Of a DNA stretch of 64,000 nt, positions 7,743 through 63,961 are shown in pieces. Numbering within the stretch: position 1 is the first letter of the stretch; every line of letters begins with the position of its first letter. The position numbers and the translations under genes were made by a program. The notes below the pieces were generated by a model. The model ran no database searches and was not told where the DNA came from. It saw only the letters and a list, made by a program, of their open reading frames with translations. Location: NCBI GenBank assembly GCA_950097015.1, contig CATNEN010000010.1, forward strand, positions 3,162,001 through 3,226,000, read 5' to 3'. Origin of the DNA: Macrostomum hystrix. Taxonomy: Eukaryota > Animalia > Platyhelminthes.

Positions 7743-7814
7743 TTCAATATATTAAAATAACTGACTGCTTTTATACGAAAATTTTCGGTATTTTCATACT
7801 GCCATTGCACTGAG

Positions 7815-27392: not shown

Positions 27393-27424
<32 letters not shown>

Positions 27425-28782: not shown

Positions 28783-29057
28783 CAGAGGCAGATTTAGGGG
28801 GGGGGGCGGGGGGGCAGTCGCCCCCCTAAATTTTAATCATGGGAATAAGATGCCCCCACCAGGGGCGCCAGTCGCAGCACTGGCGCTCCTTTTCGGCCGC
28901 TGGCGCCCCTTTTTCAGCCGCTGGCTCCCGTTTTTCAGCCACTGGCGCCCTTTCTTGGCTCCTGGCGCCCTTTTTCGGCCGCTGGCACCCCCTCTGTGAT
29001 TCTCATGGCGCTCCCCTGACAGACCGCCCCAAAACAAAATTCCTGGATCTGCCACTG
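28783..29057. mobile_element. 275-bp hAT-type MITE nested in Helitron copy 1
   Basis: TIRs CAGAGGCAGATT / GGATCTGCCACTG with 8-bp TSD ACTGTATA at 28775-28782 and 29058-29065. Confidence 0.85.
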
Positions 29058-29935
29058 ACTGTATAGAGGAGTGGCTAAGAGACATGTTTCTAAAGAAGTA
29101 ATCAAGAGGGGGCTGTTTGGACAAACTTTTCACTTATTTTTTACTTAAAACGCCCTTAAACAAACTCTTCACTTTTCATTAATGCAGTAAATAAATAAAT
29201 GGTGACCTTCACTATAAAGTTAATACAGAGACGTGAATTGCTTACTGCTTTGCTTTAAATTTCTGCCCCAAAAACAACGGGCAAAAAAAGCTAGTATCTA
29301 TATATATAAAAGTGAAAACTCTGTCTGTCTGTGTGTGTGCAACCTTTTGTCTTTATAGACGCCGAAACCGCTCAACCAAATCGCACCAAACTTTGCACAT
29401 ACCTAAAACCACCTACGCTGAGTGCAATAGGCTACTCAAATTCCCGAAAAATCATTTCCTTCCTGCTCAAAAGTGCAAAAAACTGCTCAAAAATCGTCAA
29501 AAAATCACTCAATTCGACATATCGTCGCCCCACTTCGTCAGATTTTCTCCAAATTTGATCCACTTACACTTTACATGTTTTCCAACAATGCTGTCAATTT
29601 TGAACATCTCTACTCAATCCAGAGCAAAGCTGCATCATCTCAAAGTGAGTCACTTTTTGTTTTCCGAGGACAGCCACCCCAACTCCCCTCCGCCACTCTG
29701 CGGGCCAAATTTTATTACAGCCACCCCCTCCCTTCCCCGGGCGCCGAAGCCCCAGACTGTACATTGTATTTCAAGCCGTGAATGTACACAGCCCAAACCC
29801 CTAGACTGTCTACTGGCCCCCAAGCAGCACTGAGACTGAGTGCGGTGAGTGCGGTGGCGTCCCAGTGCGCAGGGCTCTCCGGTCGATATTTCTCTCCAGC
29901 CAGCCTGGGATAGAAGAAAGAGAGAGGCTGGCGTT

Positions 29936-30550
29936 GACTGGCTGTCAGAGAGGGCAATTCTGTGTCCTAGAAATGATGCCGCCAACGAAATTAACTGCCA
30001 ACTGCTTCAGGAGTTGCCAGGTGCAGTTTTCACCTACAAGTCAATTGATACAACGTTGACTGATGACACCGCTGTGGAGTATCCTGTTGAGTTTCTGAAC
30101 TCTCTAGATCCTCCTGGAACTCCATCGCACAACTTGCAGCTGAAAGTTGGGGCACCAATTATGCTCCTCCGCAACCTGAATGCGCCAAGGCTGTGTAACG
30201 GCACCAGACTGATAGTCAGGCGGCTCTTCCCACACGTGATTGAGGCCACGATAATGACTGGATCTGGCAGAGGAGAGTCTGTGTTCGTTCCCCGGATTCC
30301 AATTATCCCCACGGACCTGCCATTTCAGTTCAAGCGACTGCAGTTCCCTGTGAGAGTGTGCTTTGCGATGACTATTAACAAGGCTCAGGGACAGTCGCTG
30401 AAGGTGGCTGGCATCAACCTGGAGACTCCTTGCTTCTCGCATGGGCAGCTTTATGTCGCCTGCTCCCGTGTTGGAACTCCAGCTGGCCTATTCATTTTCG
30501 CACCAAGGGGAAGAACGAAGAATGTGGTGTATCCCCAGGCCTTGAGGTGA
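29936..30550 (+). pseudogene. Helitron PIF1-like helicase, C-terminal fragment (copy 2)
   Basis: Same motifs as copy 1; ends VVYPQALR. Confidence 0.93.
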
Positions 30551-30702: not shown

Positions 30703-30977
30703 CAGAGGCAGATTTAGGGGGGGGGGCGGGGGGGCAGTCGCCCCCCTAAATTTTAATCATGGGAATAAGATGCCCCCACCAGGGGCGCCAGTCGCAGCAC
30801 TGGCGCCCCTTTTCGGCCGCTGGCGCCCCTTTTTCAGCCGCTGGCTCCCGTTTTTCAGCCGCTGGCGCCCTTTCTTGGCTCCTGGCGCCCTTTTTCGGCC
30901 GCTGGCACCCCCTCTGTGATTCTCATGGCGCTCCCCTGACAGACCGCCCCAAAACAAAATTCCTGGATCTGCCACTG
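30703..30977. mobile_element. hAT-type MITE nested in Helitron copy 2
   Basis: Same TIRs and ACTGTATA TSD as the copy at 28783. Confidence 0.85.
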
Positions 30978-40090: not shown

Positions 40091-40236
40091 ACACCACACC
40101 ACACCACACCCTAGCTGCAGCACTCCAATTATAAGAGTTTATGGACTTAGAGAATTTACAATCTGTAAATTCTCGACCGTCCCAAGGCTTAAATAGAGTA
40201 GTGGGATCGAGGATGGATAGAGGGAGCCAGTTAGTA

Positions 40237-40562
40237 TATACTCTAAAGAAAGGTGCGCGCCGTATATATTACCGCCGTGTATATGCGGCCTCGCTAGTTG
40301 ACGTCGGCATAGGAAAGCTGCTACTCCACGGAAAAACCGCGCAGGCGCACCTTTCTTAAGAGTATAGACGTGGCTCGTGTGTGTATTCAAGTGGCAGCCA
40401 TGTAAGTCTATGGGACACGCAAGTCAATATATACTCTTAAGAAAGGTGCGCCTTGCTAAAAATAGAATCGCCCGGGGTTTCCCCGTGCAGCGGCAAGCCA
40501 GCTCGGCTATACTAGGCCCTATATCGAAAAAACAGCTCGCGCACCTTTCTTAAGAGTATATA
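40237..40562. repeat. Four alternating-orientation copies of TATACTCT(T/A)AAGAAAGGTGCGC forming nested inverted repeats
   Basis: Arms at 40237-40258 (fwd), 40345-40366 (rev), 40428-40451 (fwd) and 40539-40562 (rev); the last pair is a perfect 24-bp IR. Confidence 0.9.
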
Positions 40563-41247
40563 TATATACCTGCATGTATAGCATTTACTACTCCACCAGC
40601 CACACCAACTAAGCTCTTGGGACGGAAGATAATTTTATCACTGACATGATAAAATTCTCTAAGTCCGTAAACTCGAGTTTAAAATTATATAGATGTCAGA
40701 GGCCTGCTATATGTGATGGATGTCGATTCGCAAACTGACTTGACTGTGAATAGACTCAAATGCTGATGATTGTTGATGGAGGTATTTTCGCGAAAAGTGT
40801 ATTTATCGTTCGTGTATTTATTATGTATTTATATAAAATTAAAGTTGGTATTTGATTAACACATCTAAGTATTCAAAGTCGACAGTTCATGATGCCTGCA
40901 AATTTTTTAAACTACTTTTACATACACTAGCTCTCGTTCACCTACGTGGTAATATTCAAAGCATAAGACAGTTTGCCGTCTCTATTGACAATATATTGTC
41001 GCGTTCACCATTAATCATAATCAGATGACTGATGAGATCAGTCAGTCAGTAATAAAATATTAATACGCTAACACAGATGTGTGCAGCTAGTCAATCGGTT
41101 ATTAATAATACTGTTATTATTAAATTTCACCAATACATATATATAAAGTATAAATATATGTAGAATTTCATTGATTAAACAAATGATCGTGCTATTCTAC
41201 AATTAGTCTGATTTGCAAAGTCGCGAGAGCAAAAATAAACGTGTAAA

Positions 41248-43726: not shown

Positions 43727-43989
43727 ATGTCAGCATTTCGTGGCCGTGGTAAGAAGGCTCGTGTGGATGCCAGCATTGCTACATCGGATTCTAATGGTCT
43801 ACGCCAGACTAGGATCGTGGACTACTTTAGATCTGAGCAGTCAACCGATCGTCCTACTGGCAACTCAATTAGACCGAGTGGGCAAGCAGCATCGGCATCA
43901 TTCGCAGCACTGGCAGGAACGGCTGGCCGGGCATCGGCTGCCTTCAATGTTCCCCGCCGTGCAGCAGTAGTACAGCAGCAACAGCAACC

Positions 43990-44023
<34 letters not shown>

Positions 44024-46366
44024 ACTGTTATTACAACCGCAGTTCAGAAGCGTCGACGTGTCCGATCGACTCTACGCAAGCGGACGCGTGTAGTTGTCGA
44101 CTTGGATGCTTCGTCTAGCACTACATCGTCGTCTGATGCTGAAGACACTGGCGTTGGATCTTTGGTAGCCATGCGACAGCCTCTGGTTATTGCCGCACAA
44201 TCAATTGGTGGCGCCGGCGACCATGCTAATCGCATAGAGTCCACGCCTAAAGTGCTATCATCTGAAGATGACTCAGCGGACGACTTGCTAGCAGACGACG
44301 TACAGCTGGAGATTGTGGACGAGTGGACGAGCAATACAGACAATGTAGAGTCGAATACTGCCCCTGTTTTGACGGCTTCTAATAGTTCAGCCTTGTCATC
44401 GCAGCTAGTCGATGATAAGTACAAAACGGAGGTGGCAGAATTATTGCGCGCAAATGGCGAGTCGACTATTCCTAAAAATAGTGCCGCACTTGGTGCCTGT
44501 CCGACTTCGCCAGATTATGCGCCTCGCTCTACACCGGCAATGTCTGTCATCGAGAATGGGACAATATCCGATGATGATGAACCAGCTCTCGCAGTATTTT
44601 CTCCAGCGTATGTCGACGCTTTTGAATCAACAGCGCAACAGTCGGGACGACGGCAGCAATCGCAGCAGCAGCATCATCAGCGAGATCAACAACCGCAGCA
44701 GCGGCAACAGCAGCAGCAGCAAGTTGGTGGCGTGGCATTTGCTCCGATGAATATGCGTTGTGTCGTTCGACATCACCACTTCTATGTCCTCGAGCTCCAA
44801 TTACCGACTACGCCTCTTTAACAGCAGAGGGCAGGTCGGTTCTTATGACTAGAAGGACGCTACATCTTATAGAGATTGCATTCATCTCGAGCGATGTGGA
44901 AAAATTCAAGGCGTTTCTAGAAGATGAATTGGTAGCTCCATGTGCACAGTTTGCCATCGGCGCAACATCATGTATTCAAGTTGACATGCTGACCAGCGAA
45001 GAAATCCGAGCGCGTCGTCAGCAGAAATACAACATGTCAATCCGTGAATGTTTAGGAGCTCCGAATCATCCCAATGGTTTGCTGATGTTCCTGAACCTGC
45101 GCCAACCAGAAGATGGTTACACTGTTTACTGCGGACTGCATGCCCTTTTGATGGAATCTGCGGAAGCTTCGGCCTACCTGCATCCTACAATGTGTAGAAT
45201 GACAGTGTCTGGTGTACGCAGTGCGTCAAGTGCAATTAAGCTAGTTACCAGTACGGACGAGTTTCCAGCTCTTTTCCGCGTTTCTACTCAAGAGTGCAGC
45301 TTGCTGACCAAGGCCTTTTGCTGGGTTGCTGCTCATGAGACGTCATCTACTGAGCCTTTGCTAGATAGTGGCTTCATGTTCGAACACTTTCGTGTCAGAC
45401 AAGAGCTCAGCGATTACTTTAAGGTGACTCAGATGAAACGCGTAATAGCAACAGAGGTGCTAGCTGGTTGCCAAAACTGTCGCCCTACTGCCGCTGCCGC
45501 CGCCGCCGCTGCTGATGATGCTGCAACAGCCGACTATGCGAGGACGACCTTGCCTACTCAGCTGGAGGTATGCAAAATATTATAATACATGACATTTTTA
45601 GCACACGTACGAGTATTGATCATTGAATTTTTGCTGTTGTTTTAATTCAAATAATTATTACTTTTGGACAATTAATTAATTAATTGTATGCGAACCTACC
45701 TAACAACACAACACCATCCAACAGGTCTCTGCTGCTGCTGATGTTGCTGCTTCCGCTGCTACTGCTGTTCAAGTACTTGATGCCGCCGTCGCTCATGTTC
45801 CCCGGCTGATCGCCGCCGCCACCAACGTGTGCCCAACTGTAAAGGCTGTGTGCAGCGCGTTACAATCGCCAACTGGTGTCGTCTATCTATACGGCCCGTC
45901 TGGCGTTGGGAAGACCCACTCTGTGCAAAGCCATCTCGGTTCTACGAAAGTGCTGAATATCCAGGTGCAGAAGCGGTCTAACACGTTTATGTTTGACAAG
46001 CTCTGCGAGACTATACACACTGCCATGTTTATTGACGAGCTACGCCCGCAACTGTTTGATGACACATCTGAAGTCATGTGCACACTACTTCGTTTGGTCA
46101 ATGGAGACACTTTTGAAGTCAATGCTAAATACAAGGCTATTCGACACGTCTCTTGGCTCAATCGACTGTTAGTGCTTGCTGGGCATGCTCCGGTCAGTGC
46201 GTATTCGATGGACTTTCAGCGCCGATTAGAACCGACACCTGATGGGCACAAGCGTCCGGTAGTTGCCATCTTCATTGGTCATTCCCTCAGTACCGACTAC
46301 CAATGCGATGGACAATGCCACCCAATACGCAATGTGTTTGGCGATCACCCGGACCGGCGAGTATGA
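43727..46366 (+). CDS. Rep-like protein 1: low-complexity N-terminus (PIP box, NLS) + unknown conserved domain + SF3 helicase; -1 frame break near 44608-44633; intron 45568-45724
   Basis: GPSGVGKT (Walker A), MFIDE (Walker B), LLRLVNG..FEVNAKYK (B'), LVLAGH (motif C position) and FQRRL (Arg finger). Phase-0 intron GAG|GTATGC...CAACAG|GTC joins 44758-45567 to the helicase ORF. The middle domain aligns with Rep-like protein 2. Confidence 0.8.
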
Positions 46367-46729
46367 GCGACAAGACGGTGCTGTTAGCAGGTTTTTTTAC
46401 ACCAAACTGCCTGCATGCTGCTATTTTATCGACTATATTTTTACTCGGTCATTCAGTCAGTCTTTCAGCTGTTTTTTTATATTTTTTGCTGTTTCATACT
46501 GTTTTTGTATGCAATTTTATAATTAGTCATACAAATAAAATCAATTTAAATGCTCAGTTTTGAGCTTTTATTGTTGTGAAGTAGGTAATTGCTACTTCTG
46601 TTGCAAAAAATCATATTTCTTGCTAATTGTAGTCAATTGACTGATTAATGAAGCCCAACACGAATACAATAAATGTATTGAGCGTTTGCATGCATAAAAA
46701 TACAAACAATAGTTACGATAATCAGTAGA

Positions 46730-46860
46730 TTTATAATATAACTGCATAATGAATCATAGTGATTGTATTATTTTACATTCTGACGTTATGACGCCTCTGC
46801 TTCCTTCAACTGTGGCATACAAAAGCTCGTCCTCAACTGGGTCTTATGTGCAATTTTTCT
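46730..46860 (-). pseudogene. Single-unit remnant of the acidic-repeat gene at 59972-60532
   Basis: Reads DPVEDELLYATVE versus DPADDELLYAAAE; the downstream AT-rich flank (ATAACTG.A.TAATGAATCATAGT) is also shared. Confidence 0.65.
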
Positions 46861-47019
46861 ATATATAGTATTACTATCTTCAAACGAAGGTATATGCAAA
46901 GTGTCAAAGTATTGATTAATACAATTTATTTATAGGTGTTATCGCGAAAAAAAATAACGACTTCTAAACCAAAAGTAAATACGGAATTTTAGCGAAAAGA
47001 CTGATATGTTCTCAAAACG

Positions 47020-47690
47020 AAGGTAAGAGCAGTATTTTTGCAAAAGTTCTTAAAGTAGTGTGCATGGCTACATATTATGGTATTTTCGCGAAAATACTGA
47101 TATCCTATTAAACAGATGTAGTTGGCGGTATTTTTGCAAAAGTTATTAAAATAGGTAGTGGTGTGCATGGCTACATATTATGGTATTTTCGCGAAACTAC
47201 TGCTATGCTATTAAACAAAGGTAGTTGGCGGTATTTTTGCAAAAGTTATTAAAGTAGGTGTGTGCATGGCTATATATTATGGTATTTTCGCGAAAATACT
47301 GATATCCTATTAAACAGTTGTAGTTGGAAGGTATTTTTGCAAAAGTTCTTAAAGTAGTGTGCATGGCTACATCTATGGTATTTTCGCGAAAATACTGATA
47401 TGCTCTAAACGAAGGTAAGGGCATTATTTTTGCAAAAGTTCTTAAAGTAGTGTGCATGGCTACATCTTATGGTATTTTCGCTAAAATACTGCTATGCTAT
47501 TAAACAAAGGTAGTTGGCGGTATTTTTGCAAAAGTTCTTAAAGTAGGTGTGTGCATGGCTATATATAATGGTATTTTCGCGAAAATACATGCATATTATT
47601 AGACTAAGTATCTTGTACATTTTTAACCATAGACACATTTAGTATTTCTGCAAATTGCCAAGAGTCATGAGTGGATTTTTTTCGCGAAAA
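47020..47690. repeat. Array of ~94-105-bp units each containing palindromes TTTTGCAAAA and TTTTCGCGAAAA
   Basis: TTTTCGCGAAAA or a 1-nt variant at 47083, 47186, 47285, 47381, 47475, 47574 and 47679. Confidence 0.92.
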
Positions 47691-47874
47691 GACTATATGC
47701 TATCTATATATTGTAATGAATACCTGTGAATGAAAAATAATGACAGTTTTTTTGCAAAAATACTAACGATACGAAGATGAACATATTTTCCTCGCTCGCA
47801 CTCACTCTCTCTATTGAAATTGCAATAGCGGCAATTCAGCCCGGCTGTGTAGTCTATGGTTTTTTATGTAGCGA

Positions 47875-48257
47875 TTCTTATGCAGCAAAAGAGCCCGGCC
47901 GAGTCCCCTATGCTTTCTTATGCAGCAAAAGAGCCCGGCCGAGTCCCCTATGCTTTCTTATGCAGCAAAAGAGCCCGGCCGAGTCCCCTATGCTTTCTTA
48001 TGCAGCAAAAGAGCCCGACTCAACCCTTAATGCTTTCTTATGCAGCAAAAGAGCCCGACTCAACCCTTAATGCTTTCTTATGCAGCAAAAGAGCCCGACT
48101 CAACCCTTAATGCTTTCTTATGCAGCAAAAGAGCCCGACTCAACCCTTAATGCTTTCTTATGCAGCAAAAGAGCCCGACTCAACCCTTAATGCTTTCTTA
48201 TGGAGCAAAAGAGCCCGACTCAACCCTTAATGCTTTCTTATGCAGCAAAAGAGCCCG
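47875..48257. repeat. 40-bp tandem array (TTCTTATGCAGCAAAAGAGCCCG + 2 variant halves), ~9.5 units
   Basis: Period exactly 40. The first 3 units have GCCGAGTCCCCTA and the next 6 have ACTCAACCCTTAA. Confidence 0.95.
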
Positions 48258-48633
48258 CGACCCGCTTTGCTATAATTCTAAATTGATGACTACTGATAGC
48301 AATTGTTGCAGTGTTAGGTGCGAGATCGGTTGGCTGATTGAATACATATACCTGTCATGATAATTTTGTTTCAAATGGCGCAGTTGTGACAGCAGCGGAA
48401 TGCAGTTCGAACATTCTATGAAATGAGTTTCATGCAGGGTATTATCTTACGTTACATGATGACTGCAGCCCCATGCCACTGCCCGCACCTGAGTTAGGGA
48501 CCCATTTCGCACTGTGATGATCGATCGAAATTTTTCCAATATACTGTGGGATATATAGTGACTATAGCGGTATTAGCTAGTGTTAGACGCGTTGCTGCTG
48601 CACTCACGACATTGTTGGGTGCGTAGAACCACG

Positions 48634-49053
48634 ATGAATGCTCATCCTGTGGCGCTGTTCGGCTCGCCGGCCATCGTGGCACTCCTGGCCAGATGCGACA
48701 TCGCCTGCCTGGCCCCGTTCCTGGCGCACCGAGGACGACTGGAGCAGCTGACCTGCCTGCAGCGCCACTGCCCGAATGCTGAGCTGAATGCCACCCAGCT
48801 ACACACCTTGCTGAAGAGCCTCCTGGACTGGCTGCTACAACACCAGACAGCTGCGGGCTACGAGACCATCCTGGAGGTGACCTGCCTAACAGAGAACGAG
48901 GCTTTCGACTTGGCCGAGCTGCTAGGCCTGCTGGAGGACACCTGTTCGGAGCTGCAGCACATTCTACACGGGCTGGACTACTGGCGCGGCGTGCAGCAAA
49001 TTGCTAGACTGCGAGAGTTGCTCCGGAGTCGCCAATATCGAATGGAGCAGTAG
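48634..49053 (+). CDS. Orphan helical protein family H, copy 2 (139 aa, GC-rich divergent paralog)
   Basis: CDIACLAPFLAHRGRLEQL..LQR..PNAE.NA..L..LL.....WL..H..A..Y...L.VT.....EA.D..E.L.LLE....ELQ.I.HG..YW aligns with 61735-62115. Confidence 0.8.
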   Translation: MNAHPVALFGSPAIVALLARCDIACLAPFLAHRGRLEQLTCLQRHCPNAELNATQLHTLLKSLLDWLLQHQTAAGYETILEVTCLTENEAFDLAELLGLLEDTCSELQHILHGLDYWRGVQQIARLRELLRSRQYRMEQ

Positions 49054-49218
49054 CAGCAGCAAAAAGACTTAGCTAGACAGTTTAAATAACTTATCCCTGT
49101 TTGTGAACCCAAACCAACTCTGCACCAATAAAAGAATGGTTTAGTATCAACTAAGTTGGCAGATCCAACTCGATACCGGTAAGTTTATTTTTGATAACCT
49201 AAAAATAGACCGTATAAG

Positions 49219-49351
49219 AGTACAGTTCGTGGTGCGCGCACAATCCCTAAGAAATATATACATAAGACGATGCGAGGTGCTTATCTACCTAAAAATAGCA
49301 GGCAAGTCCTTATATATTTTTAAGTAATGTGCGCGCACTATGAACTGTACT
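49219..49351. repeat. Inverted-repeat cassette (~40-bp imperfect arms, ~50-bp spacer) upstream of Rep-like gene 2
   Basis: AGTACAGTTCGTGGTGCGCGCACAATCCCTAAGAAATATATA ... TATATATTTTTAAGTAATGTGCGCGCACTATGAACTGTACT. Confidence 0.88.
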
Positions 49352-49649
49352 TCTAGCTAAAAGTACACAATCAACTTAACGGGATCCGAATTAACCTAAT
49401 TAAGCACCTATTAATAGAATCTCAATCTATCAGTTTAAAGCTAGTAACACTGGTACTATCTGCTGCTCATCCTAAATAGCCTGCTCCTCCTCCTTGGGAC
49501 GTACTTGGGACTCTATTATTAATAGCGAATCCCACCCTGTTGCACCCAGTTGAAGTTGAGTACCTGGGACTGCGTTGGCTTTCTGCAGCCTGCTCATTTT
49601 CATACATCCAAATTTGAACGCGCCTATAATTAACCTGCGGAAGCACAGA

Positions 49650-52442
49650 ATGTCGTTCAACTTTTCAACCGGCTGCGACAGCGACGATGAGCGAATTGCG
49701 GCCGCGCTGGACGAGTTTGAGAGAGTTGCCCAAGATAGTAACTCCGCCGGGCCGGTAGCGTCATCAACTCGCCAGCCACCATCACAGCGAAAAAGAAAGA
49801 GCGCTCCCTCTCAACGTCGGATTGTCAATGCAGCAGCCGCAGAATCTACGCCAGGCCCAAAGCGTATATATACTTTCACCCCAGTGCAGACAGCAGCGGT
49901 GGCTAACATCAGCAGCGACGCCGACGACTTCAGCCTGCTGCCATTGAGCGGTGTCATGCGCCTAAACACTGGAGAGCAGCAGCCTGCCAGTGACCAGATG
50001 TCCACAGGCAATCAGCAGCCACCGCCTGCCAGTATATCGGCCGTCTACGCGCCCATCTCCCACGCGATGGCAGCCTCAGCCTCGACTGCGCCAAAAGGGA
50101 GCATGCTGGCTTGGCTCGGAGATCAGCACCGGAGTGCCAAGAAGGCCACCAGCAGATGGTCATCGCCGGCAGCGATCAGGCACGTCAGGCGACATGCTCC
50201 TGCCAACTGCGGCGATGGCGACGGGGCGGCGTCTGATGCGCCCGACATGTCCACGGCAGCCCTACAGCCTCGCAGCCCCGTCGTCATCGAGATTGAGGAC
50301 GTCGACGACGAGCGCGCCGATAACGGCAGGCCGACAGCGGCAACTCGCACAAAGGCGGAGCCATCGGAGCCTAACGAGCAGGAGGCGGCGATGGATAGCG
50401 ACGACCGCGATGCTCTGCAGGCACTGCTGGACTACGAGGCGTCCACCGTTGCGCTGTCAGTCGCTGCAGATCCCCCACCGTCGGGCGCTGATGCGGAAAT
50501 GGAGGAGGCCGCCAGCACGGTGCCGAAACCGCCTCAAGTCGCGGCCGACCAACAACAGCAGCCAGGGAGGCGGAGATTCCGTTTCCAGCGGCTCGAAACG
50601 ACTGCTCCCGCTGTTGCTGCTGCTGCCGACTGCTCCATTGTGGGCGCCATGGTGCCAGACTCGCAGCCCGATGGCCGACGATTAGCAGTCGCCAAGACCA
50701 CACCGTCTCAGCGTCCGGAAGATGAGACGACGGCCTACGTGGTGTCGCCTGGCACAGCGGCATTCGCAGCAGCCGTGGTGGCCGCTATGAATGAGGCCAG
50801 CCAGTCCGTCCCTGTCGGCGAGGAGTGGTGGCGCATATTAACACCACAGCCGCTGCAGCAACAAGAGCAGGTGCAGCTCGAGCGTCCTCCCTCGCTGGTG
50901 CCCTTCAGCTACAGTCCGCCGGCGTCTGCGGCACAGCTTATTCACTTCCTCCAGCAACAGCAGGGGGACAGCGAGGCGAGCGGGAGCGGGGTCGGCGGCG
51001 CCAGAGGACAACGAGGCGGCCGAGGGGTGCGACGGCTGGGCCAAAATCCGCTGCTTAATGCGGCAGCAGCACAGCAGCAGTTCACTGTGACGCGCTCAGT
51101 CAGCCGGCCGCTCGCAATGACCGGTGCTGCTCCTGCGGAGCGACTGCCCGAGGACAGCGGCATTCTGACCGGGCGCCGCTATTTGCACGTCTTCCACATC
51201 GACAAGGTGCGCTTCGTCGGTGAGTCACTTGCTTTGTTCATAAGCTCTGAATCATATAACCAGCTGCTGGCATCCACTGTTTGCATGCTGCCTACATAAA
51301 CAGGTCGTGCCAAAGTATATCTGGGCGAGGCTCTGGAGGCACACTGTGTCGAGCTCGTCCTGGCGTCCAGCCCGGGCCTCTGCGTCGGCATGGATGAGTT
51401 CTGCGACCGGCGGCTAGTCGCTGACCCGCTCTCCGTCGACGAGATGGAGCAACAGCAGCAGCAGCAGCAGCACAGCGAGTATCGGCCACACCGCACTCTG
51501 TCCGGCTTCGTGCGCCTGGAGACCAACGCGGCCGGCTGGCATTTGTACGAGCTGCTGTTCAGCCTGCTGCCTAGCCGAGACGAGGGACGCTGCTTTGTGG
51601 TGCCCGACCGGACCACCCTGACGCTGTGCGGCGTCCGCTCGCCAGACAGTGTGCTGCGGAGCCTGACGCAGCACGACGGCTACCCGCTGCTGATCGGGAT
51701 CGGCGCCACGCAGTGCAGCATGCTGGTGCAAGCGACTCGGTGGGCGCTGTCCTACCCGCTGACTGCCAACCTGCCCGACCAGACTGACGGCTTCTTGTTG
51801 GCCCACCAGCAGATGCGCGCCACGTTGCTGGGGGTCTTTAGAGACGTGCAGCGCCAGCGCCGGATTCGCAGGGAGCAGCTCGCCGGCTGTTCCGCATGTT
51901 CCACCGAGGCTGCCGACATTAGGAACCTGTGCCCGCTCCGAGAGGCCGTCTGCACAGCCCTTCGCCACCAGTCGGGCGTTGTGTACCTTTACGGGCCGTC
52001 GGGAGTCGGCAAGACCACCGCCGTCGAGCGCCACCTGGGCCAGGAGCGCGTCTTCTGTCCGGTCATCAAGCGCTTCGGTGGCAATGACTTCATGTTCGAC
52101 GGCCTGGACACCGCGCGCCACTCCGTCATCTTTCTGGACGAGGTGCGGCCGCACATGTTCGAGGGCGGCGACCTGGAGACCACGCTGTTGCGCCTGCTGA
52201 ACGGCAACAGCTTCCTGGTCAATGCGAAGCACCAGGCGCACGTCTACCTGGACTGGGGCCAACGGCTGGTGATCATGGCCGGCCACGCCTCACCTGACGA
52301 CTACCCGGCTGACGTGCAGCGGCGCCTGCGCAACGAGGGCAACACGTGCGTCGAGGTCGACCACGACATCGAGGCCTGCCAGGGGGGGTGCCGCCAGCAG
52401 CCAATGTTCGGAGCCGCCGCCGCCAACGCCCAGGTTGAATGA
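49650..52442 (+). CDS. Rep-like protein 2: acidic/low-complexity N-terminus + unknown conserved domain + CxxC..C...C + SF3 helicase; exons 49650-51219, 51304-52442
   Basis: Phase-1 intron GTC G|GTGAGT...AAACAG|GT joins the two ORFs in frame. Motifs GPSGVGKT, IFLDE, LLRLLNG.SFLVNAKHQ, VIMAGH and VQRRL are present. Confidence 0.87.
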
Positions 52443-53937: not shown

Positions 53938-54052
53938 GTACAGTCTGTAGTGCGCGCACATTCCCTAAAAAATATATAAGGCATGTCAGCTCTAATTTTA
54001 GAACGACGATCCTTATATTTTTTAAGTATTGTGCGCGCACTATGAACTGTAC
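53938..54052. repeat. Inverted-repeat cassette, second copy of the 49219 type
   Basis: GTACAGTCTGTAGTGCGCGCACATTCCCTAAAAAATATATAAGG ... CCTTATATTTTTTAAGTATTGTGCGCGCACTATGAACTGTAC. Confidence 0.88.
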
Positions 54053-54512: not shown

Positions 54513-57382
54513 TCAATCAAAATTATGCTCCGCCACTGAGTGCAGCCGCCGTCGCTTTCCGGCCACCGGTCTACCGTGCAGGACTGCGTCGGCTCGTTGG
54601 GTGCTCGCCGCCACCTCCCCACTTCCACCAGCCAGGCTGCTGATGAGTCCCTGGGTCGGCGGCCTAACTATTGGTCGCATCTCTGCGTCACCTGATGGCA
54701 CCACAAACCGGCGGACAATATCGCGGCTGCGAATTACTGTGCCCATCTCGGTGGCCATCTGGGCATTGTGCCCATAATTGTACCGGATGACAGCTGCAGA
54801 TGTGCCGTGCGCTCTGGCGAACATATCCAGCTGCTCCGGCTCCATCATGAGCACTACGGCACAGAGGGTGCGACGCCAGTGCGTGGCCACATAGTGCCGA
54901 CCCAGTACTCGCTGCCCGCCTGCGCTGATCATGCGGCTCATTGCCGACTGGCTGTACACACCGCCGAACACATCAATGAAGACGGTCGGCGACTCCGGTT
55001 GCTCGATGCCGCGAGCAGCAAGCGACGGCACGATATATTCGTCGTGCAGGCGCAGCAAGGCCTCGCAGAATAGATCCGGCAGCACCATCCTGGCTGGGTC
55101 GCCGGAGTGTCCGACCTTGTGCGGCACTTCACGCAGCGGCAGGACGAGATGCGAGTGCCCAGCCAGATCGGCAGCGGACGGCCCGCTCTCCCCATCTGCA
55201 CTTTGCGTGTGTTGGCGGAACAGCTGTTTTTGGTCGGCCGACGCGTTTCGCCGAACCGAACGGTCGACCAGGTGTCGCCGACGGATGTAGATCCACGGCA
55301 GGAGTCGCAGGGGCTGCTCAATGCTGCAGTAGAACAGCATCTCCTGCACAATCCTCCGCAGACAAACCATCCGGCGACTGAAGGCACCATCATCTGCTTC
55401 GCCGTTGTCTTTGGTGACATCAGCGATGCCATCAGCGACCACACCTGCTGCCTGCATGCCCCATTCGCCGTCGACTGGCAGCAAAGTCCAGCTGTGCCTT
55501 TGTAGCATGGCAAAAAAACGATCACGGCGGGCGAACACGGCATCGACCTCGTCCACGTTGACGTAGGTGTCCATGAAGGCCACCTGCCGCTCGTTGTGGC
55601 CAAGCTTGTAGACTGCCTGCATAGTATAAATGTGGTTGCGTTTACTTATAGTAGATAGCAGCACGAAACCAAATAGAACTAACTGTCATTAATGCAGCTG
55701 CTGTGCAGCTAGCTCACCTGCTGGATGGCGCGGACGTTGCCGAACTCGCCGCGAGCCTGCTGCACCACGCTGCTAAGGCGGGCGATGAGAGCCTGCTCAG
55801 CCGCCAGCGGGTTGTTGGCCTTCTGCGCCAACTGCATTCTCCAGCAGACGCCACTGCCGACAGAGTCGACGTCCTCAATAGCAGGGCGCTCGCTGTCAGG
55901 CGAGGGTGAGTCGATGCTGCAGAACAGCTCGGCTTCGCGCAAGCCAACGGCGGCCATGATGGCATTGGCGCCTCGCAGGCCCCTCACGCGCAGCCAGCCC
56001 TCCATGCAGCGGCAGATGCTGACAAGCTCCTGGCACTTGCGCGCAGCAGTCGACTGGGCCAGCTGCATGGCATCACCGACTGTTTCAGCGCTGAAGCAGT
56101 CCTGCACCCTGTCCGGCTGAAGCAGCAGGTCTGCAAGCGATATGCCCGCTCGCTGCCAGGTGCGTAGAAGCGTCGAGCTCACGGACCTGCTGATGTCGCG
56201 CCAACGCTGCTGGTGGCACAAGTTGGCCGCAATCCTGGCCCGCGATGGGTCCCTCCACCATAGCTCCCGCAGGCGTTCCACCGTTGCGGAGATGCTGGGC
56301 CGGTCACCCAACGGCTGCAGCAGCTCTGGTGGCACGGGCTTCGCAGGTGGCGACGTGCGAAAGTGTCGACAGCGCGGACCGCGACGCTGTTGCTGCTGCT
56401 TCTGATCGGCTGTCGACGCTTCCTGCTGCAGTTCTGCTCCGAAGATGGACAATCGAAGCCGGTCGAATTCGGCATTAGCCAGCCTTCTCTTTGCAGCAGT
56501 CCACTTTGCTGCAGCTGCTCGACGCTGCCTCGGCGGGGTAGCTGCCAGCTTCACTAGCGGCCTCTGTGCAGCTGACAGCACAGCCGATGACGTGCTGGGA
56601 CGACAAAGTGCTGCCTTGGTGGCCTGCACCGCCAACTGCAGACAGGCAGCCGAAGAGGAAGACTCTGCTGCCACCGTCTGGACCGTCGGCAGCGTCCGCA
56701 TTCTGATGCTGGTTCCGGGCAGCAAGCCGACATCGTCATCTCCATCATCGTCATCGTCAGCGACTACGGGGGCCTCCTGTGAGGACATCAGCAGCAGCGG
56801 CGCAGTCGGGTCAAATAGGCGTCGCCGGACGGCTGGACGGCTGGCTGACAACAGCCGAGCACTGGCCGCTGACTGTCGACCGTCAACGGACGGCGCGGCG
56901 ATGCTGTAGAGCTCGGCCAACAGAGACCCAGCCTCGTATTCAGCTGGTTCTGCCTCTGAAGGCTGCTGCGGAGGCGGTGGTGGCATCTGCTGCGGAGGCG
57001 GTGGTGGCATCTGCTGCGGAGGCTGTGGCTGCTGGTGTTCCACAGCAACGGTAGCGACAATAGCTGGCACTGCTGGACACCTGTGCTGCCTTGCTGTCCT
57101 ACGCAGCACCTTGCCGCAGGCTGGGCACGCGTGTACATGCTCAGTGTTGGCTGAGCTGCGCGTGTGGGTGCTGCACGTCAGGCAGAGCCAGACCATCTGG
57201 GCACGCTGCTTGGCTGACGCCGCTGCCCAAGATGCCTCGGACGGCCGCACCTTGACTGGGGCATCCTCGAGTCGGAATTGGCGCACAGCCTCCTCCGCGT
57301 GCCTCCTCAGGAAGTGGCGTTTCGGGTGCGTCTGCGGTCTGCCGTCGCCACAGAAGATGCAGCACGACTCGTTGTCTGTCAT
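54513..57382 (-). CDS. Zinc-finger tyrosine recombinase (~920 aa); exons 57382-55718 and 55616-54513
   Basis: C-terminal catalytic pattern: R (IEQPLRLLPW), K (VPHKVGH...RMVLP), VFIDVFGGVYS, HxxR (THWRRT), ARAHGTS..VIRYNY (GTS variant, Tyr nucleophile). Phase-0 intron CAG|GTGAGC...ATGCAG|GCA. N-terminal CIFC..H....H, CLTC and CPAC..H.C zinc fingers. Confidence 0.8.
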
Positions 57383-58499
57383 AGCTATTGTTATTACAAA
57401 TTGATGCAGTGCCATATAGGTGTATGAACTGAATTCAGTATGCATGCAACACATGCTATATACAGTCCGTTGTGCGTGCATCTAAATAAATATATATATG
57501 CCCCTTTATCCCATTATGGAATACACTATTTTAAGTGTTGTGCGCGCACATTGTCCCGTACTGTTGTCATCGCTGCTGCATTTATATTCGATTGAGTGCT
57601 GCGTTGAGCACATAAATCACTTATTTTTCTGTTGTCCCTAACAACAACAACAACAACAACAACATCCCGGCTGTAAAAATTATAAGCCTCTGAATCATTT
57701 ATAAATTTTAAAAACAAAATTTTTCATTTGCAATGTAGTACAATCAGCTCAGACATTCGATTTTCCAGTGAACAGCACACCCACCCCCTCCAACTCGATC
57801 TTCCTCCCTCAAAAGCAGTGCCGAGCCAGCCAGACAGACCTGCAGATGGAAAGAGAGACGACTTCGATCGTCTTCAGTCTATGGCCACAGGGGTGACATT
57901 ATCGATTGGTTAAAGCAGACACACTGCTTCTCTTTTTCAAGGCAGAGCAGTGGCCTTCCACACCCTTTTACCATAGACTATGAATTTAGAGACAGGGCCG
58001 CCCCCTTTCGCTTTCGAAGGTTTAAAGAAAGGGTGGCAAGCAAAGTAGCAGTCTTTTAGTTTTAGCCCGGCCCAACTGCTCGATCGAACTGCAGCTTACA
58101 GTCAAATATAATTCAGAGATTCATCCACAATTCGAATCAACAGTCTGCCTTCTATTTGCTTGGACTATATTAAAACAGGCTACAGATATAATATCGACAG
58201 AGAGCCACAGGATCTATTATTATGTCAACAGCAAGCATTAGGATCTAATATATTTCTAGGCAGCTCAGAACTGCATAACACTTACAGAGATTACTAATAT
58301 ATTATAATTATAGAGAACTGCATGCGCTATTATCTATTAGATTAACAGACCGATTGTTATATGTATACAAATACTAATTGAAGGGCCTATTATATATACA
58401 AAGACTAATCTGAGGGCCTATTATATTAACACAGCTTGTAATGCATATTTATGAACAGATACTTATATGGCCTATTTAAAATACATAGCCTTTTTCTTA

Positions 58500-59120: not shown

Positions 59121-59971
59121 TTTCCGTGTTTTTTGCTTGTCGTCGCTGCCGCCGCCAGTCAAAGTTAAATCAAATTATTGAATGTCATAAGACATAGAGT
59201 CTGTGTCAATCAGTGTCAATCAGTCAGTCAATCGATCTCGAACGAAACAATACATTCAGTATACTGTACACTGCTGCTGCTCTAATGCAATATCAATAAC
59301 GAGAGAAAAAGAGTGCTTGCGAGCAAAGCCATAGAGGAAGCGTGGTCTTCCCAGTTCTAAAAATAGCTGCAGAGCTAGCGCGTGAATTTAAATACGCGTG
59401 AATTTAAATACACTGTTTACGTTGCTATAAACGAGAGAAGATGAAAGTGATTTTAGGAAGGCCTTAATGTTCATTTTTTGTCTTAATCTGACTTCCGAAT
59501 AAATAAATCTAAATAGTAAGCTAAATGGAGCAGAACTGAACTGCTGCGCACTGAAATATAAGCGCTATACGAAAATTGCTATTTGCGTTTCAATGAGGCC
59601 CAAATGGCTCTCCGAAAAGACCGAATAATGAGTCGAAAAAAGCTGGGCAAAAATCTGAAAATTAGGAAAGTATAGTGACATATTTTTGCGAAAGAACATG
59701 TTCTAAAACAAATACAAACTGCTGTATTTATGCGAAATTGCATTGAGCATTAAAATAATATGAACGTTTACAAACAAAAAAATACAAACAATAATGCTTA
59801 CGTTTGTGCTTATGATTGTTGGTGATGGTATTTTCACGAAAAGATTAGTGTATTTTCAATCACTAACAAAACAACACCAATATGTATATCAAATCGTTAT
59901 GATAATCAGAGGCTTTATTTATAAAATAACTGTAATGAATCATAGTTTCTGCATTATTTTATAATATAATT

Positions 59972-60532
59972 TCAAACGTATGCCTCCGCCTCTTCAGCTG
60001 CGGCATACAATAGGCAGTCGTCAGCTGGGTCAAATAAACAGCTACTGGCTGCCATCGCTGCCGCTGCTGCTGACGCCTCCGCCTCTTCAGCTGCGGCATA
60101 CAAAAGCTCGTCATCAGCTGGGTCAAACAAGCAGCTACTGGCTGCCATCGCTGCCGCTGCTGCTGACGCCTCCGCCTCTTCAGCTGCTGCATACAAAAGC
60201 TCGTCATCAGCTGGGTCAAATAAACAGCTACTGGCTGCCATCGCTGCCGCTGCTGCTGACGCCTCCGCCTCTTCAGCTGCTGCATACAAAAGCTCGTCAT
60301 CAGCTGGGTCAAAGCAATTGGCTGCCATCGCCGCTTCGACCTCTTCAGCTACGGCGTATAACAAATGGTCGTCTGCCAGGCCGAATACAAAACTGTATGT
60401 TGAATTGTATGTTTCATCATACCCGTAGTCATCATAGCCTGGCTATTCATTCAGCTCAACGTCATCGTCGTGACAGTTGGATTTTTCCGCATCGTTTAGA
60501 GTTGGCCCTGATGATGATGTTGATGTAGGCAT
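59972..60532 (-). CDS. Acidic tandem-repeat protein (LFDPADDELLYAAAEEAEASAAAAAMAASSC x3-4, 90-bp units); one in-frame TAG near 60443 after ATG 60532
   Basis: The repeat preserves the frame and amino-acid motif. The upstream frame MPTSTSSSGPTLND...LNE*PGYDDYGYDETYNSTYSFVFGLADDHLLY continues into it. Confidence 0.6.
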
Positions 60533-62739: not shown

Positions 62740-63642
62740 GAACCAGAGAACCTGGTTCAACACCAACAACACCAGCCGATCTGAGACATTCAATCGTTTC
62801 TCTTTGATAACTTTACCTCCTTTGTTATCTTACTGTCAATACTGATTGGTCATACATCTCTGATACTGATACTGAAACGGATACATAAATAAATCAAAAC
62901 AATAAAACTGATTAAATGATTGAATGATTAAATTATTCATGCTAATCTCGTCAATACGTGTTATGAATCGTTCTGTTATTTTATTACGTCTATTATTAAC
63001 ATTTGTGCGACAATAAGAACTCACTAACTGACAAGCAAAAAGAAACGAATTTTCGAGATGCATTATTCCTTGTACATTATTGTACATTATTGTACATTAT
63101 TCAGCCATATAAGTTAGTTGGATAAGTTTGAAAAAGTAAAGTACAAACGACGAATAAATTATTATACACTTTCGTATCGCTAAATATAAGATGTTACAAG
63201 ATGCACTTTTAAAACGTGCAGACTATAGGTATGTAGTGCATTAAATTGTGCGTATTTTACCAAAGACATGTCTGCTTGGTACAGCTCGATTTTTCGCTAT
63301 TTTTTATGTTCTTCGCATCCAAATTTTTCTTTCGAAAATACAGTCAGATGTTTTTGGCCGTAGACACAAAAAACGGCTGCATATAATTCATATTGTATGC
63401 AGTATTTTTGCAAAAGTTCTTTAAGTAGCGTGGCCATATCTATGGTATTTTCGCGAATATAGCCAGACATTTCATCTATAATTAGTATTTGCGCACTGCC
63501 AAAAACTTTTTCGCGAAAGTACATACGTATTCTTAAGTCAAAACGACTATGATCGTTGACTACTTGAGATCTGTGCATATTGTGCCAGTGGTAAAAAGGT
63601 AAGAAGGCTCTTGTGGAAGACAGTATCATTAGCCATCGTTAC

Positions 63643-63714
63643 CATCGGGCCGTACGTTAGCCAGATTTCAGTTTTTTTCTGAAAGCTTTCATCTGGCTAA
63701 CGTACGGCCCGATG
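63643..63714. other. Perfect 24-bp inverted repeat with 24-bp spacer (hairpin)
   Basis: CATCGGGCCGTACGTTAGCCAGAT ... ATCTGGCTAACGTACGGCCCGATG; the spacer holds a further TTCAG/CTGAA mini-stem. Confidence 0.95.
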
Positions 63715-63817
63715 ATAATGTGAGCATTAGCCAGCCCTGCTCTGCACCCGGACATCCCCGCGTTTCAAAATATAAATATACCGGACTGCTATGGTATTGT
63801 AGTGTATAGTGATTCGG

Positions 63818-63961
63818 TGTGACGGTTCAGTGGTTCACATACTGCGACATGTCACATACTGGTTGAACAGTATAATGTATTTTCGCGTCCTTCAACGGAA
63901 GCTGCTAAGATATCTGCTGGCTATGTGACATGTCGCAGTATGTGAACCACGAACCGTCACA
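63818..63961. other. ~40-bp inverted repeat (one bulge) flanked by ~40-bp direct repeats
   Basis: TGTGACGGTTCAGTGGTTCACATACTGCGACATGTCACATA ... TATGTGACATGTCGCAGTATGTGAACCACGAACCGTCACA; TGCTCTGCACCCGG...CGTTTCAAAATATAAATA at ~63738 and ~63963. Confidence 0.92.

What the first reader, a model, noticed from the sequence alone, without database searches (positions are those of the whole stretch)
43727..52442. Two diverged paralogous Rep-like proteins: SF3 helicase preceded by an unrecognised ~230-aa domain and a Cys cluster instead of an HUH nuclease
Seen: both genes share a middle domain (e.g. GLLMFLNLRQPEDGYTVY vs TLSGFVRLETNAAGWHLY; MTVSGVRSASS vs LTLCGVRSPDS; CSLLTKAFCW vs CSMLVQATRW). Both then have LAGCxxC...CP....VC.AL....GVVYLYGPSGVGKT, and both replace the motif-C Asn with His (AGH). 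Their introns are at different positions. Established: Walker A/B, the B' VxAK motif and the RR finger resemble CRESS Rep/2C-type SF3 helicases; polyoma large T has an origin-binding domain plus Zn domain before its SF3 without nuclease activity. Inference: a new initiator-helicase family whose middle domain binds the repeated origin-like motifs.
Basis: partly seen in the sequence, partly recalled or inferred. Interest (0 to 1): 0.82.

Follow-up and report, generated by a model that had tools for sequence, protein, structure and literature searches.

The report
Domesticated nuclease-dead viral Rep genes
Two neighbouring genes in a Macrostomum-like flatworm genome descend from the replication-initiator (Rep) gene of a small DNA virus; they have lost the DNA-cutting residues, kept the helicase motor and been preserved by selection, so they look like viral genes put to work by the host, not a new protein family.

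Summary
Genes A (43727-46366) and B (49650-52442) are + strand paralogues: 29% identity in the middle domain and 48% in the P-loop domain.

The P-loop domain is an SF3 helicase. The best fold matches are AAV Rep40/68, papillomavirus E1, B19 NS1 and CRESS Reps.

The "unrecognised ~230-aa domain" is not new. It is a degenerate HUH nuclease domain plus the helical oligomerisation domain of a Rep protein. Profile comparison with intact HUH-SF3 Reps gives 99.8% probability (E 1e-29). In every relative of the window genes the two HUH histidine columns and the motif III Tyr and Lys columns are replaced (one relative keeps the second His). Walker A, Walker B, B' Lys and the Arg finger are kept. Seven Cys/His positions are invariant in this clade only.

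Gene B has an orthologue at the same position in Macrostomum lignano, with the same intron. Replacement differences are 0.16-0.19 per site against 0.63-0.74 for silent sites. Both paralogues predate that species split.

No capsid gene or conserved origin-like array accompanies the genes. They are best read as exapted endogenous Rep genes. This parallels the dead-nuclease initiators of polyoma- and papillomaviruses, but there is no evidence here of a replicon.

The parts
43727..46366 (+). Gene A, the A-type paralogue. It has an N-terminal low-complexity region, a dead-HUH domain, an oligomerisation domain, an SF3 ATPase and a C-terminal Cys/His cluster. Its three ORFs have two interruptions: one frame change and one AT-rich stop-containing spacer.
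   Evidence: ORFs; paralogy with B; A-type relative in M. lignano (P0004), grouped in 194/200 bootstraps
44851..45282 (+). Gene A degenerate HUH-nuclease-like domain: five strands with two main helices (plus two short ones). The His, His, Tyr and Lys columns all carry other residues.
   Evidence: AF2 model, pLDDT 73.7; alignment and column counts; hhalign 97.8%, E 1.2e-12; weak Foldseek matches to the PCV2 Rep nuclease and the SV40/JCV LT origin-binding domain
45301..45480 (+). Gene A helical oligomerisation domain, ending in CxxC
45830..46228 (+). Gene A SF3 ATPase core, running from C-x6-C through Walker A, Walker B, B', the motif C equivalent (A-G-H) and the Arg finger
46280..46318 (+). Gene A C-terminal His/Cys cluster
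49650..52442 (+). Gene B, the B-type paralogue: two exons, apparently intact, 902 codons if spliced as in the M. lignano orthologue
49650..51173 (+). Gene B N-terminal low-complexity extension with short conserved acidic motifs. It is 48% identical to the M. lignano orthologue, with dN/dS about 0.28.
51174..51701 (+). Gene B degenerate HUH-nuclease-like domain, split by the intron after its first strand
51220..51303 (+). Gene B intron: 84 nt, GT..AG, phase 1, at the same position as in the M. lignano orthologue
   Evidence: sequence; tblastx and ORFs of L001
51720..51899 (+). Gene B helical oligomerisation domain, ending in CxxC
51930..52328 (+). Gene B SF3 ATPase core
   Evidence: AF2 model with pLDDT above 90 over this part; Foldseek against PDB, top hits AAV2 Rep40/68, BPV E1, B19 NS1 and vientovirus Rep at E 6e-7 to 2e-5; Foldseek against BFVD, CRESS Rep and NS1 at E 5e-12
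52362..52391 (+). Gene B C-terminal His/Cys cluster

Best explanation
Genes A and B are host-resident descendants of one ancient germline capture of a Rep gene (HUH nuclease + oligomerisation domain + SF3 helicase) from a small ssDNA virus-like replicon. They sit in the genome of a Macrostomum-like flatworm.

Shown by the data:
- The captured gene duplicated before the split from M. lignano.
- It gained introns and long low-complexity N-terminal extensions.
- It lost the metal-binding histidines and the nicking tyrosine/lysine of the nuclease.
- It changed the motif C asparagine.
- It gained seven invariant Cys/His positions.
- It kept Walker A, Walker B, the B' lysine and the arginine finger, and both domains are under purifying selection.

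Inferred mechanism: the protein can no longer nick DNA or attach to it covalently. It still assembles through its oligomerisation domain into a ring-shaped ATPase. The dead nuclease fold serves as a DNA-binding module, as the origin-binding domains of large T antigen and E1 do. The Cys/His positions form one or two zinc sites that brace the collar and the C-terminus.

Inferred role: a host DNA transaction that needs ATP hydrolysis. This fits better than a pure decoy role, because the ATPase and inter-subunit residues have stayed invariant over a divergence at which silent sites are saturated.
For: Homology to intact HUH-SF3 Reps:
- The exhaustive profile search gives 38 hits. The distant ones are 340-570 aa proteins with Pfam Gemini_AL1 plus DUF5906, PPV_E1_C or RNA_helicase.
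- hhalign: 99.8%, E 9.6e-30 over 245 columns. The middle domain alone gives 97.8%, E 1.2e-12, starting at the motif II strand.
- tblastn of single intact Reps on the window: E 3e-11 and 6e-12.
- Foldseek against BFVD aligns 350-440 columns to full-length CRESS Reps and NS1, E 5e-12.

SF3 identity:
- Foldseek against PDB.
- The profile of the intact relatives against PDB sequences: E1 8e-10, Rep40 3e-8, NS1 8e-6.

Dead nuclease:
- Intact relatives: His-1 18/18, His-2 17/18, Tyr 19/19, Lys 19/20.
- Clade of the window genes: His-1 0/6, His-2 1/6, Tyr 0/8, and no Lys in 10 rows (8 once the two junk-aligned rows are set aside).
- The ATPase columns are kept in the same clade.

Host residence and selection:
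- The M. lignano locus L001 carries the B orthologue at 68% nt identity, with the same intron and the same downstream neighbour. The host genes EME1/MUS81 and COG7 lie upstream.
- pN 0.19 against pS 0.74 over 239 codons, and pN 0.16 against pS 0.63 over 117 codons.
- Host genes in the window: an ASC channel and a ZER1-like gene.

Old duplication: window A groups with M. lignano P0004 in 194/200 bootstraps, and the clade is monophyletic in 146/200.

Background: polyoma- and papillomavirus initiators combine an SF3 helicase with an inactivated HUH domain (PMC6668415).
Against: - There is no expression or splicing evidence.
- Gene A has one frame change between its N-terminal ORF and the conserved part. 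This may be an intron or a frameshift.
- The M. lignano B orthologue shows one frame change inside the middle domain. The cause (assembly error or a real change) is unknown.
- The M. lignano A-type model (P0004) departs from the family at two ATPase motif positions and lacks 17 residues. The A lineage may therefore be less constrained.
- The fold match of the middle domain to solved HUH/OBD structures is weak: E 0.07-0.3, probability 0.6-0.84.
- The replaced motif C asparagine might mean impaired ATP hydrolysis.
- Zinc binding, ring assembly, DNA binding and the cellular role are all inferred.
- I could not inspect the model coordinates to check Cys/His geometry.
Confidence: 0.75

Rival explanations
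1. Antiviral decoy. The nuclease-dead Rep is kept because it binds the origin of related exogenous viruses, or co-assembles with their Rep and poisons replication, acting as a dominant-negative.
For: The oligomerisation domain and the DNA-binding fold are conserved while nicking is lost. Intact relatives exist in sequencing data. The usual hypothesis for conserved endogenous Rep genes is antiviral (my own knowledge, not tested here).
Against: A decoy does not need its own Walker A/B, B' lysine and arginine finger, yet these are invariant. Selection is strongly purifying over a very deep divergence, with no sign of turnover. Two old paralogues are retained. No closely related exogenous Rep was found; the nearest intact ones share only about 20% identity.
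Confidence: 0.2
2. A and B are initiators of a still-replicating virus-like or episomal element, and the dead-nuclease domain binds the neighbouring 99-bp and 40-bp arrays as origins, in the manner of large T antigen.
For: The architecture parallels LT/E1: OBD-like fold, CxxC, then SF3. Arrays lie between the two genes at 46986-47588 and 47875-48257. Palindromic elements of about 130 bp flank gene B.
Against: Gene B is syntenic with M. lignano and shares an intron with its orthologue. The arrays and palindromes are absent from that locus. Satellites and small palindromes of other sequence are common across the window. No capsid or other viral ORF lies between 42 and 54 kb. There are only two copies in 64 kb.
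Confidence: 0.05
3. Decaying endogenous viral elements. A and B are Rep pseudogenes with no function, whose open frames survive by chance.
For: The nuclease motifs are lost. Gene A has a frame change. The M. lignano copies show one frame change (B-type) and aberrant ATPase motif positions (A-type).
Against: pN/pS is about 0.25, with silent sites saturated. Frames of 794 and 902 codons are open apart from the interruptions. Seven Cys/His positions and all the ATP-binding residues are invariant across the clade.
Confidence: 0.07
4. Cargo of a cut-and-paste or hairpin-ended mobile element whose ends are the two palindromic elements of about 130 bp, at 49221-49350 and 53938-54052.
For: The two palindromes are 73% alike and bracket gene B in a 4.8-kb unit. 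Each folds into a long hairpin, with z-scores of -6.4 and -7.6.
Against: The M. lignano orthologue sits between the same flanks without them: a conserved 49-nt block upstream and the conserved neighbour downstream both lie outside the palindromes. Each palindrome is a complete small TIR element by itself, like others in the window.
Confidence: 0.05

Closest known systems
Rep proteins of CRESS-DNA viruses and NS1/Rep of parvoviruses (HUH nuclease + oligomerisation domain + SF3 helicase)
   Same: The order of domains is the same, and they are homologous by profile and by fold. Walker A, Walker B, B' and the Arg finger are all present. The nearest intact relatives carry an H-x-H motif II and a single-Tyr motif III, and match Pfam Gemini_AL1, DUF5906, PPV_E1_C and RNA_helicase.
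   Different: The catalytic His, His, Tyr and Lys are all replaced. The motif C Asn is replaced. Seven extra invariant Cys/His positions are present. The N-terminal extensions are 330-520 aa long. The genes have introns and a chromosomal, syntenic location. No capsid gene or stem-loop origin is evident.
Polyomavirus large T antigen and papillomavirus E1
   Same: An SF3 helicase is preceded by an HUH-derived fold that lacks the nuclease motifs (PMC6668415). Foldseek lists the SV40/JCV origin-binding domains among the best matches of the middle domain, and E1 among the best matches of the ATPase. A CxxC lies between the two domains, where large T has its zinc module.
   Different: There is no significant sequence match to LT or E1 families for the window genes themselves. 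No DnaJ domain is present. The loss of the nuclease is independent, since it happened within a clade whose sister sequences are intact Reps. This is a host gene, not a viral genome.
Conserved (co-opted) endogenous rep genes of parvoviruses and circoviruses in animal genomes
   Same: The gene is virus-derived and fixed in the germline. It is orthologous between species, has an open reading frame and is under purifying selection.
   Different: This rests on my knowledge of that literature; I found no paper describing such a gene in flatworms. Here the source lineage is an unnamed Rep clade. The nuclease is systematically dead while the helicase motifs are intact. The gene has duplicated and has acquired a Cys/His cluster and introns.

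Membership tests
SF3 helicase | Walker A (P-loop) and a closely spaced Walker B | tested here: met
   Present in A and B, about 40 residues apart. The columns are conserved in 11-12 of 12 clade members.
SF3 helicase | Motif B' with a conserved Lys | tested here: met
   Lys in 10/11 clade members and 18/19 intact relatives; present in both A and B.
SF3 helicase | Motif C ending in Asn (sensor 1) | tested here: not met
   Intact relatives have S-N in 17/18. The window clade has A-G followed by His. No Asn in A or B.
SF3 helicase | Arginine finger after motif C | tested here: met
   Arg in 9/9 clade members; present in both A and B.
SF3 helicase | SF3 fold, with solved SF3 helicases as best structural matches rather than host AAA+ | tested here: met
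   The top 30 Foldseek PDB hits are AAV Rep40/68, E1 and NS1. Lon, RuvB and DmpR come lower. BFVD hits are all Rep or NS1.
SF3 helicase | Hexameric ring and DNA unwinding | not testable with these tools
   No multimer modelling or assay was available.
HUH endonuclease (Rep) superfamily | Motif II: two metal-binding His (HUH) | tested here: not met
   His-1 in 0/6 and His-2 in 1/6 of the clade, against 18/18 and 17/18 in intact relatives. A and B have neither.
HUH endonuclease (Rep) superfamily | Motif III: catalytic Tyr (with Lys) | tested here: not met
   Tyr in 0/8 truly aligned clade members, against 19/19 in intact relatives. No Lys in 10 rows (8 once the two junk-aligned rows are set aside), against 19/20.
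HUH endonuclease (Rep) superfamily | Common descent of the domain (profile homology) | tested here: met
   hhalign 97.8%, E 1.2e-12, from the motif II strand through motif III and the oligomerisation domain; 99.8%, E 9.6e-30 with the ATPase included.
HUH endonuclease (Rep) superfamily | HUH fold (five-stranded sheet with flanking helices) | tested here: inconclusive
   The AF2 model has the expected strand-helix order. Foldseek matches to the PCV2 Rep nuclease and LT origin-binding domains are weak: E 0.07-0.3, probability 0.6-0.84.
Autonomous CRESS-DNA virus or parvovirus genome | Small genome with a capsid gene beside rep | tested here: not met
   No further viral ORF between 42 and 54 kb. 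The locus is chromosomal and syntenic.
Polyomavirus LT / papillomavirus E1 initiators | Sequence membership in the LT or E1 families | tested here: not met
   No LT or E1 family hit for A or B. PPV_E1_C appears only below threshold, and only in intact relatives.
Polyomavirus LT / papillomavirus E1 initiators | Zinc module between the origin-binding domain and the ATPase | tested here: inconclusive
   An invariant CxxC lies at that place, with further invariant Cys/His. The geometry could not be checked because no coordinates were available.
Exapted endogenous viral gene | Orthologous position in a second species | tested here: met
   The B orthologue and the downstream neighbour are collinear in M. 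lignano contig NIVC01001938.1.
Exapted endogenous viral gene | Purifying selection on the coding sequence | tested here: met
   dN/dS is about 0.07 and 0.13 in the conserved parts and 0.28 in exon 1. Silent sites are saturated, so these ratios are upper-bound-like.
Exapted endogenous viral gene | Expression and a host phenotype | not tested
   No transcript data were available in the tools. A paper search for the M. lignano gene id found nothing.

The most novel reading that the evidence does not exclude
This clade may be an independent, still-traceable instance of the same transition that produced the initiators of polyoma- and papillomaviruses: an HUH nuclease turned into a pure DNA-binding domain, a zinc module added, and the SF3 motor kept. 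Here intact-nuclease sister sequences are still at hand. The short environmental contigs that carry other members of the clade have not been placed in any genome. They could belong to an unrecognised lineage of double-stranded, LT-like replicons of flatworms, of which A and B would be captured copies.
Probability: 0.12. Interest if true: 0.8.

Novelty: new variant of a known kind. Interest (0 to 1): 0.55.

Why it matters
Endogenous Rep genes are common, but most are fragments. This case is unusual in several ways:
- Two old paralogues have stayed under strong constraint.
- The nuclease is systematically disabled while every ATP-binding and inter-subunit residue of the helicase is preserved.
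- A new invariant Cys/His cluster has appeared.

The case shows which parts of a Rep protein a host keeps when it reuses one. It also offers a natural parallel to the proposed origin of large T antigen and E1 from HUH Reps, with intact sister sequences available for comparison.

The intact relatives form a Rep clade that no source names, so the source virus group may be undescribed.

For flatworm biology, the locus flags a conserved candidate DNA-binding ATPase of unknown role in a model organism for regeneration and germline studies.

Tried and rejected
- Direct Pfam and PDB sequence searches with the window ORFs gave only sub-threshold P-loop hits: RNA_helicase at 16-18 bits against a cut-off of 21.5, and DUF5906 at 16 bits. 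The clade profile alone reached a CRESS Rep only at E 0.004. The middle-domain profile alone found nothing in PDB sequences and no new relatives. The link to Rep needed the intact intermediates from the exhaustive search.
- Host AAA+ origin: rejected by fold ranking.
- Arrays as origins: they are not conserved in M. lignano.
- Palindromes as element ends: rejected by synteny.
- A search for further copies or viral ORFs in the window found none.
- Rfam: no hit.
- The locus of the M. lignano A-type protein P0004 is not on record.
- Paper searches found no description of these genes.
- The third protein search for named relatives of the intact clade returned only unnamed Logan and JGI proteins.

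Full report
**1. What is there**

The stretch 43727-52442 holds two + strand genes.

- Gene A is read from three ORFs: 43727-44821, 44758-45585 and 45827-46366.
- Gene B is read from two ORFs: 49575-51299 and 51390-52442. Its first ATG is at 49650, just before an acidic motif that the M. lignano orthologue shares.
- The middle domains are 29% identical over 166 residues (E 3e-20).
- The P-loop domains are 48% identical over 135 residues (E 4e-42).
- The long low-complexity N-terminal parts do not align.
- tblastn finds no further copy in the window.

**2. Whose genome**

The best database relative of gene B is a hypothetical protein of the free-living flatworm Macrostomum lignano, at 70% identity. 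Its locus, L001 (contig NIVC01001938.1), lines up with the window as follows.

- It matches across gene B at 68% nucleotide identity.
- It matches again across the downstream minus-strand gene: window 54714-57352 against L001 15298-17648.
- A 49-nt block upstream also matches.
- The L001 orthologue has the same two-exon build, with an intron at the same place.
- The host genes EME1/MUS81 and COG7 lie a few kb upstream in L001.
- The window itself carries an ASC channel gene and a ZER1-like gene.

The window is therefore chromosomal DNA of a related Macrostomum-like flatworm, and gene B is an orthologous, vertically inherited gene. The L001 orthologue shows one frame change within the middle domain. 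Whether that is an assembly error or a real change cannot be told.

**3. The ATPase is SF3**

- Directly, A and B reach only sub-threshold Pfam scores (RNA_helicase, DUF5906, AAA_16), and PDB sequence searches are blank.
- An AlphaFold2 model of gene B's second exon has mean pLDDT 80, above 90 over the ATPase.
- Its best solved matches are AAV2 Rep40/Rep68, bovine papillomavirus E1, B19 NS1 and a vientovirus Rep (E 6e-7 to 2e-5). Host AAA+ proteins rank lower.
- Against predicted viral structures, the top 50 matches are all CRESS-DNA virus Reps or parvovirus NS1 (E from 5e-12). They align over 350-440 columns, that is over both domains.

**4. The 'unrecognised' middle domain is a dead HUH nuclease plus the Rep oligomerisation domain**

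An exhaustive profile search of 1.84 billion representatives gave 38 hits. They fall into two groups.

- Group 1 is the close set: M. lignano proteins and short fragments on 1-3 kb JGI, ENA and Logan contigs.
- Group 2 is the distant set: proteins of 340-570 aa on 2-5 kb contigs. They carry a Pfam Gemini_AL1-type nuclease domain and DUF5906, PPV_E1_C or RNA_helicase. They show clear H-x-H and single-Tyr motifs in the alignment.

The evidence that group 1 descends from group 2-like Reps is this.

- A profile of group 2 matches E1 (8e-10), Rep40 (3e-8), NS1 (8e-6) and, weakly, the TYLCV Rep nuclease (0.02) among solved structures.
- Profile-profile comparison of group 1 with group 2 gives 99.8% probability, E 9.6e-30 over 245 columns.
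- The middle domain alone gives 97.8%, E 1.2e-12, starting at the motif II strand.
- The AF2 model of gene A's middle-domain exon (pLDDT 73.7) has the strand-helix order of an HUH fold, followed by long helices.
- Its Foldseek matches are weak, but the most probable are the PCV2 Rep nuclease and the SV40/JCV large T origin-binding domains.

**5. Which residues are kept and which are lost**

Two rows with junk-aligned N-termini were set aside.

| Column | Group 2 (intact relatives) | Group 1 (window clade) |
|---|---|---|
| HUH His-1 | 18/18 | 0/6 |
| HUH His-2 | 17/18 | 1/6 |
| Motif III Tyr | 19/19 | 0/8 |
| Motif III Lys | 19/20 | 0/10 (0/8 without the two junk-aligned rows) |

- Genes A and B carry non-catalytic residues at all four nuclease positions.
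- The group 1 rows, genes A and B included, keep the Walker A Lys, the Walker B acidic pair (one row, the M. lignano A-type model P0004, departs at its second residue), the B' Lys (one row departs) and the Arg finger.
- Motif C is S-N in group 2, but A-G followed by His in group 1.
- Group 1 alone has invariant Cys/His at a CxxC after the oligomerisation helix, a C-x6-C in the helix before Walker A, one His after Walker A, and an H-x4-C-x3-C near the C-terminus (H-x6-C-x3-C in the A-type).
- A few group 2 members share only the C-terminal part of that pattern.

**6. Selection and age**

Window gene B was compared with the M. lignano orthologue piece by piece.

| Piece | Codons | pN | pS | Ratio |
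|---|---|---|---|---|
| C-terminal piece | 239 | 0.19 | 0.74 | about 0.07 |
| N-terminal piece of exon 2 | 117 | 0.16 | 0.63 | about 0.13 |
| Exon 1 | 272 | 0.39 | 0.69 | about 0.28 |

Silent sites are saturated, so the divergence is deep and the constraint is strong.

A neighbour-joining tree on 155 ATPase columns gives three results:
- window A groups with the M. lignano protein P0004 in 194/200 bootstraps;
- window B groups with P0001;
- group 1 is monophyletic in 146/200.

The A/B duplication is therefore older than the species split. P0004 departs from the family at two ATPase motif positions and lacks 17 residues. It is also fused to a GPCR in its gene model, so the A lineage may be less constrained, or the model may be poor.

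**7. Interruptions**

- Gene B has one intron, 51220-51303. It is GT..AG, phase 1, and shared with M. lignano.
- Gene A has two interruptions. One is a frame change between the N-terminal ORF and the middle-domain ORF. The other is an AT-rich (30% GC), stop-containing spacer with GT..AG ends between the middle-domain ORF and the ATPase ORF.
- No tool predicts these two and no relative is known to share them, so I do not claim them as introns.

I never built, searched or folded a joined-exon protein of either gene. Every search and fold used single exons by reference. The joined step is left out.

**8. Surroundings and the origin idea**

- Between A and B lie a 99/289-bp array (46986-47588) and a 40-bp array (47875-48257).
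- Neither array occurs at the M. lignano locus.
- The window is full of other satellites, such as a 32-bp array of 166 copies at 7818-13273.
- Two palindromic elements of about 130 bp, 73% alike, bracket gene B at 49221-49350 and 53938-54052. Both fold as long hairpins.
- These palindromes are absent from L001. The conserved flanks lie outside them, and other small palindromic elements occur elsewhere in the window.
- No capsid-like or other viral ORF was found, and Rfam finds nothing.

Nothing supports a replicon here.

**9. Interpretation**

- Identity (well supported): A and B are exapted endogenous Rep genes with a dead nuclease and an intact-looking SF3 motor.
- Mechanism (inferred): an oligomeric ATPase that binds DNA through the former nuclease fold, braced by zinc at the invariant Cys/His, and unable to nick.
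- The invariance of the ATP-binding and inter-subunit residues favours a host function that needs ATP turnover over a pure decoy role, though the decoy role is not excluded.
- The parallel with large T antigen and E1, whose origin-binding domains are inactivated HUH domains (PMC6668415), is a likeness of design. It is not family membership.

**10. Novelty**

Endogenous and co-opted rep genes are a known kind. I rate this a new variant of a known kind.

Noticed in passing
window 49221-49350 and 53938-54052: Two palindromic, hairpin-forming elements of about 130 bp, 73% alike and each with terminal inverted repeats of about 28 bp. They bracket gene B in a 4.8-kb unit and are absent from the M. 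lignano locus. They are probably independent MITE-like insertions.
   Followed up: partly
window 46986-47588 and 47875-48257: A 99/289-bp array and a 40-bp array (9.6 copies, 97% alike) lie between genes A and B. Pieces of the first resemble 59892-60310 and 63399-63461. Neither array is present upstream of the M. lignano orthologue.
   Followed up: partly
window 4922-16564: A block of G-rich satellites with strong GC skew: 9-bp units (4922-6003), 23-bp units (6656-7023), 32-bp units (7818-13273, 166 copies), 24-bp units (13533-14252) and two further 32-bp arrays (14684-15206, 15694-16564).
   Followed up: no
window 27311-28630 and 29849-30550: Two ORFs with a Pif1 2B helicase domain, each followed by the same 20-bp repeat (28880-28991 and 30800-30911). 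This is a tandem duplication of about 1.9 kb, and it may be Helitron-like or a Pif1-family gene.
   Followed up: no
window 3178-4590; 18000-20372: Ordinary host genes: an amiloride-sensitive sodium channel (ASC) ORF and a ZER1-like gene on the minus strand.
   Followed up: no
window 49650-52442 against its flanks: Gene B is 64% G+C. Gene A is 50% and the spacer between them 41%. The long antisense ORF at 51414-52286 is probably a by-product of this composition.
   Followed up: no
window 48580-49053: A 157-aa ORF upstream of gene B with no Pfam match and no counterpart in the M. lignano locus.
   Followed up: partly
window 54513-57481 (minus strand); L001 15298-17648: The downstream neighbour gene is conserved between the window and M. 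lignano but has no Pfam family.
   Followed up: partly
L001 8454-10759: The M. lignano orthologue of gene B shows one frame change within its middle domain. The deposited protein (P0001, 252 aa) therefore covers only the C-terminal part.
   Followed up: partly
P0004 (M. lignano, UniRef A0A1I8FT91): The A-type relative is annotated as a 594-aa protein fused to a 7TM receptor part. This is probably a merged gene model.
   Followed up: no
window 40234-40563, 63639-63718, 63830-63950; L001 11201-11922: Further small palindromic or TIR-bounded elements of other sequence, which shows that such elements are common in these genomes.
   Followed up: no
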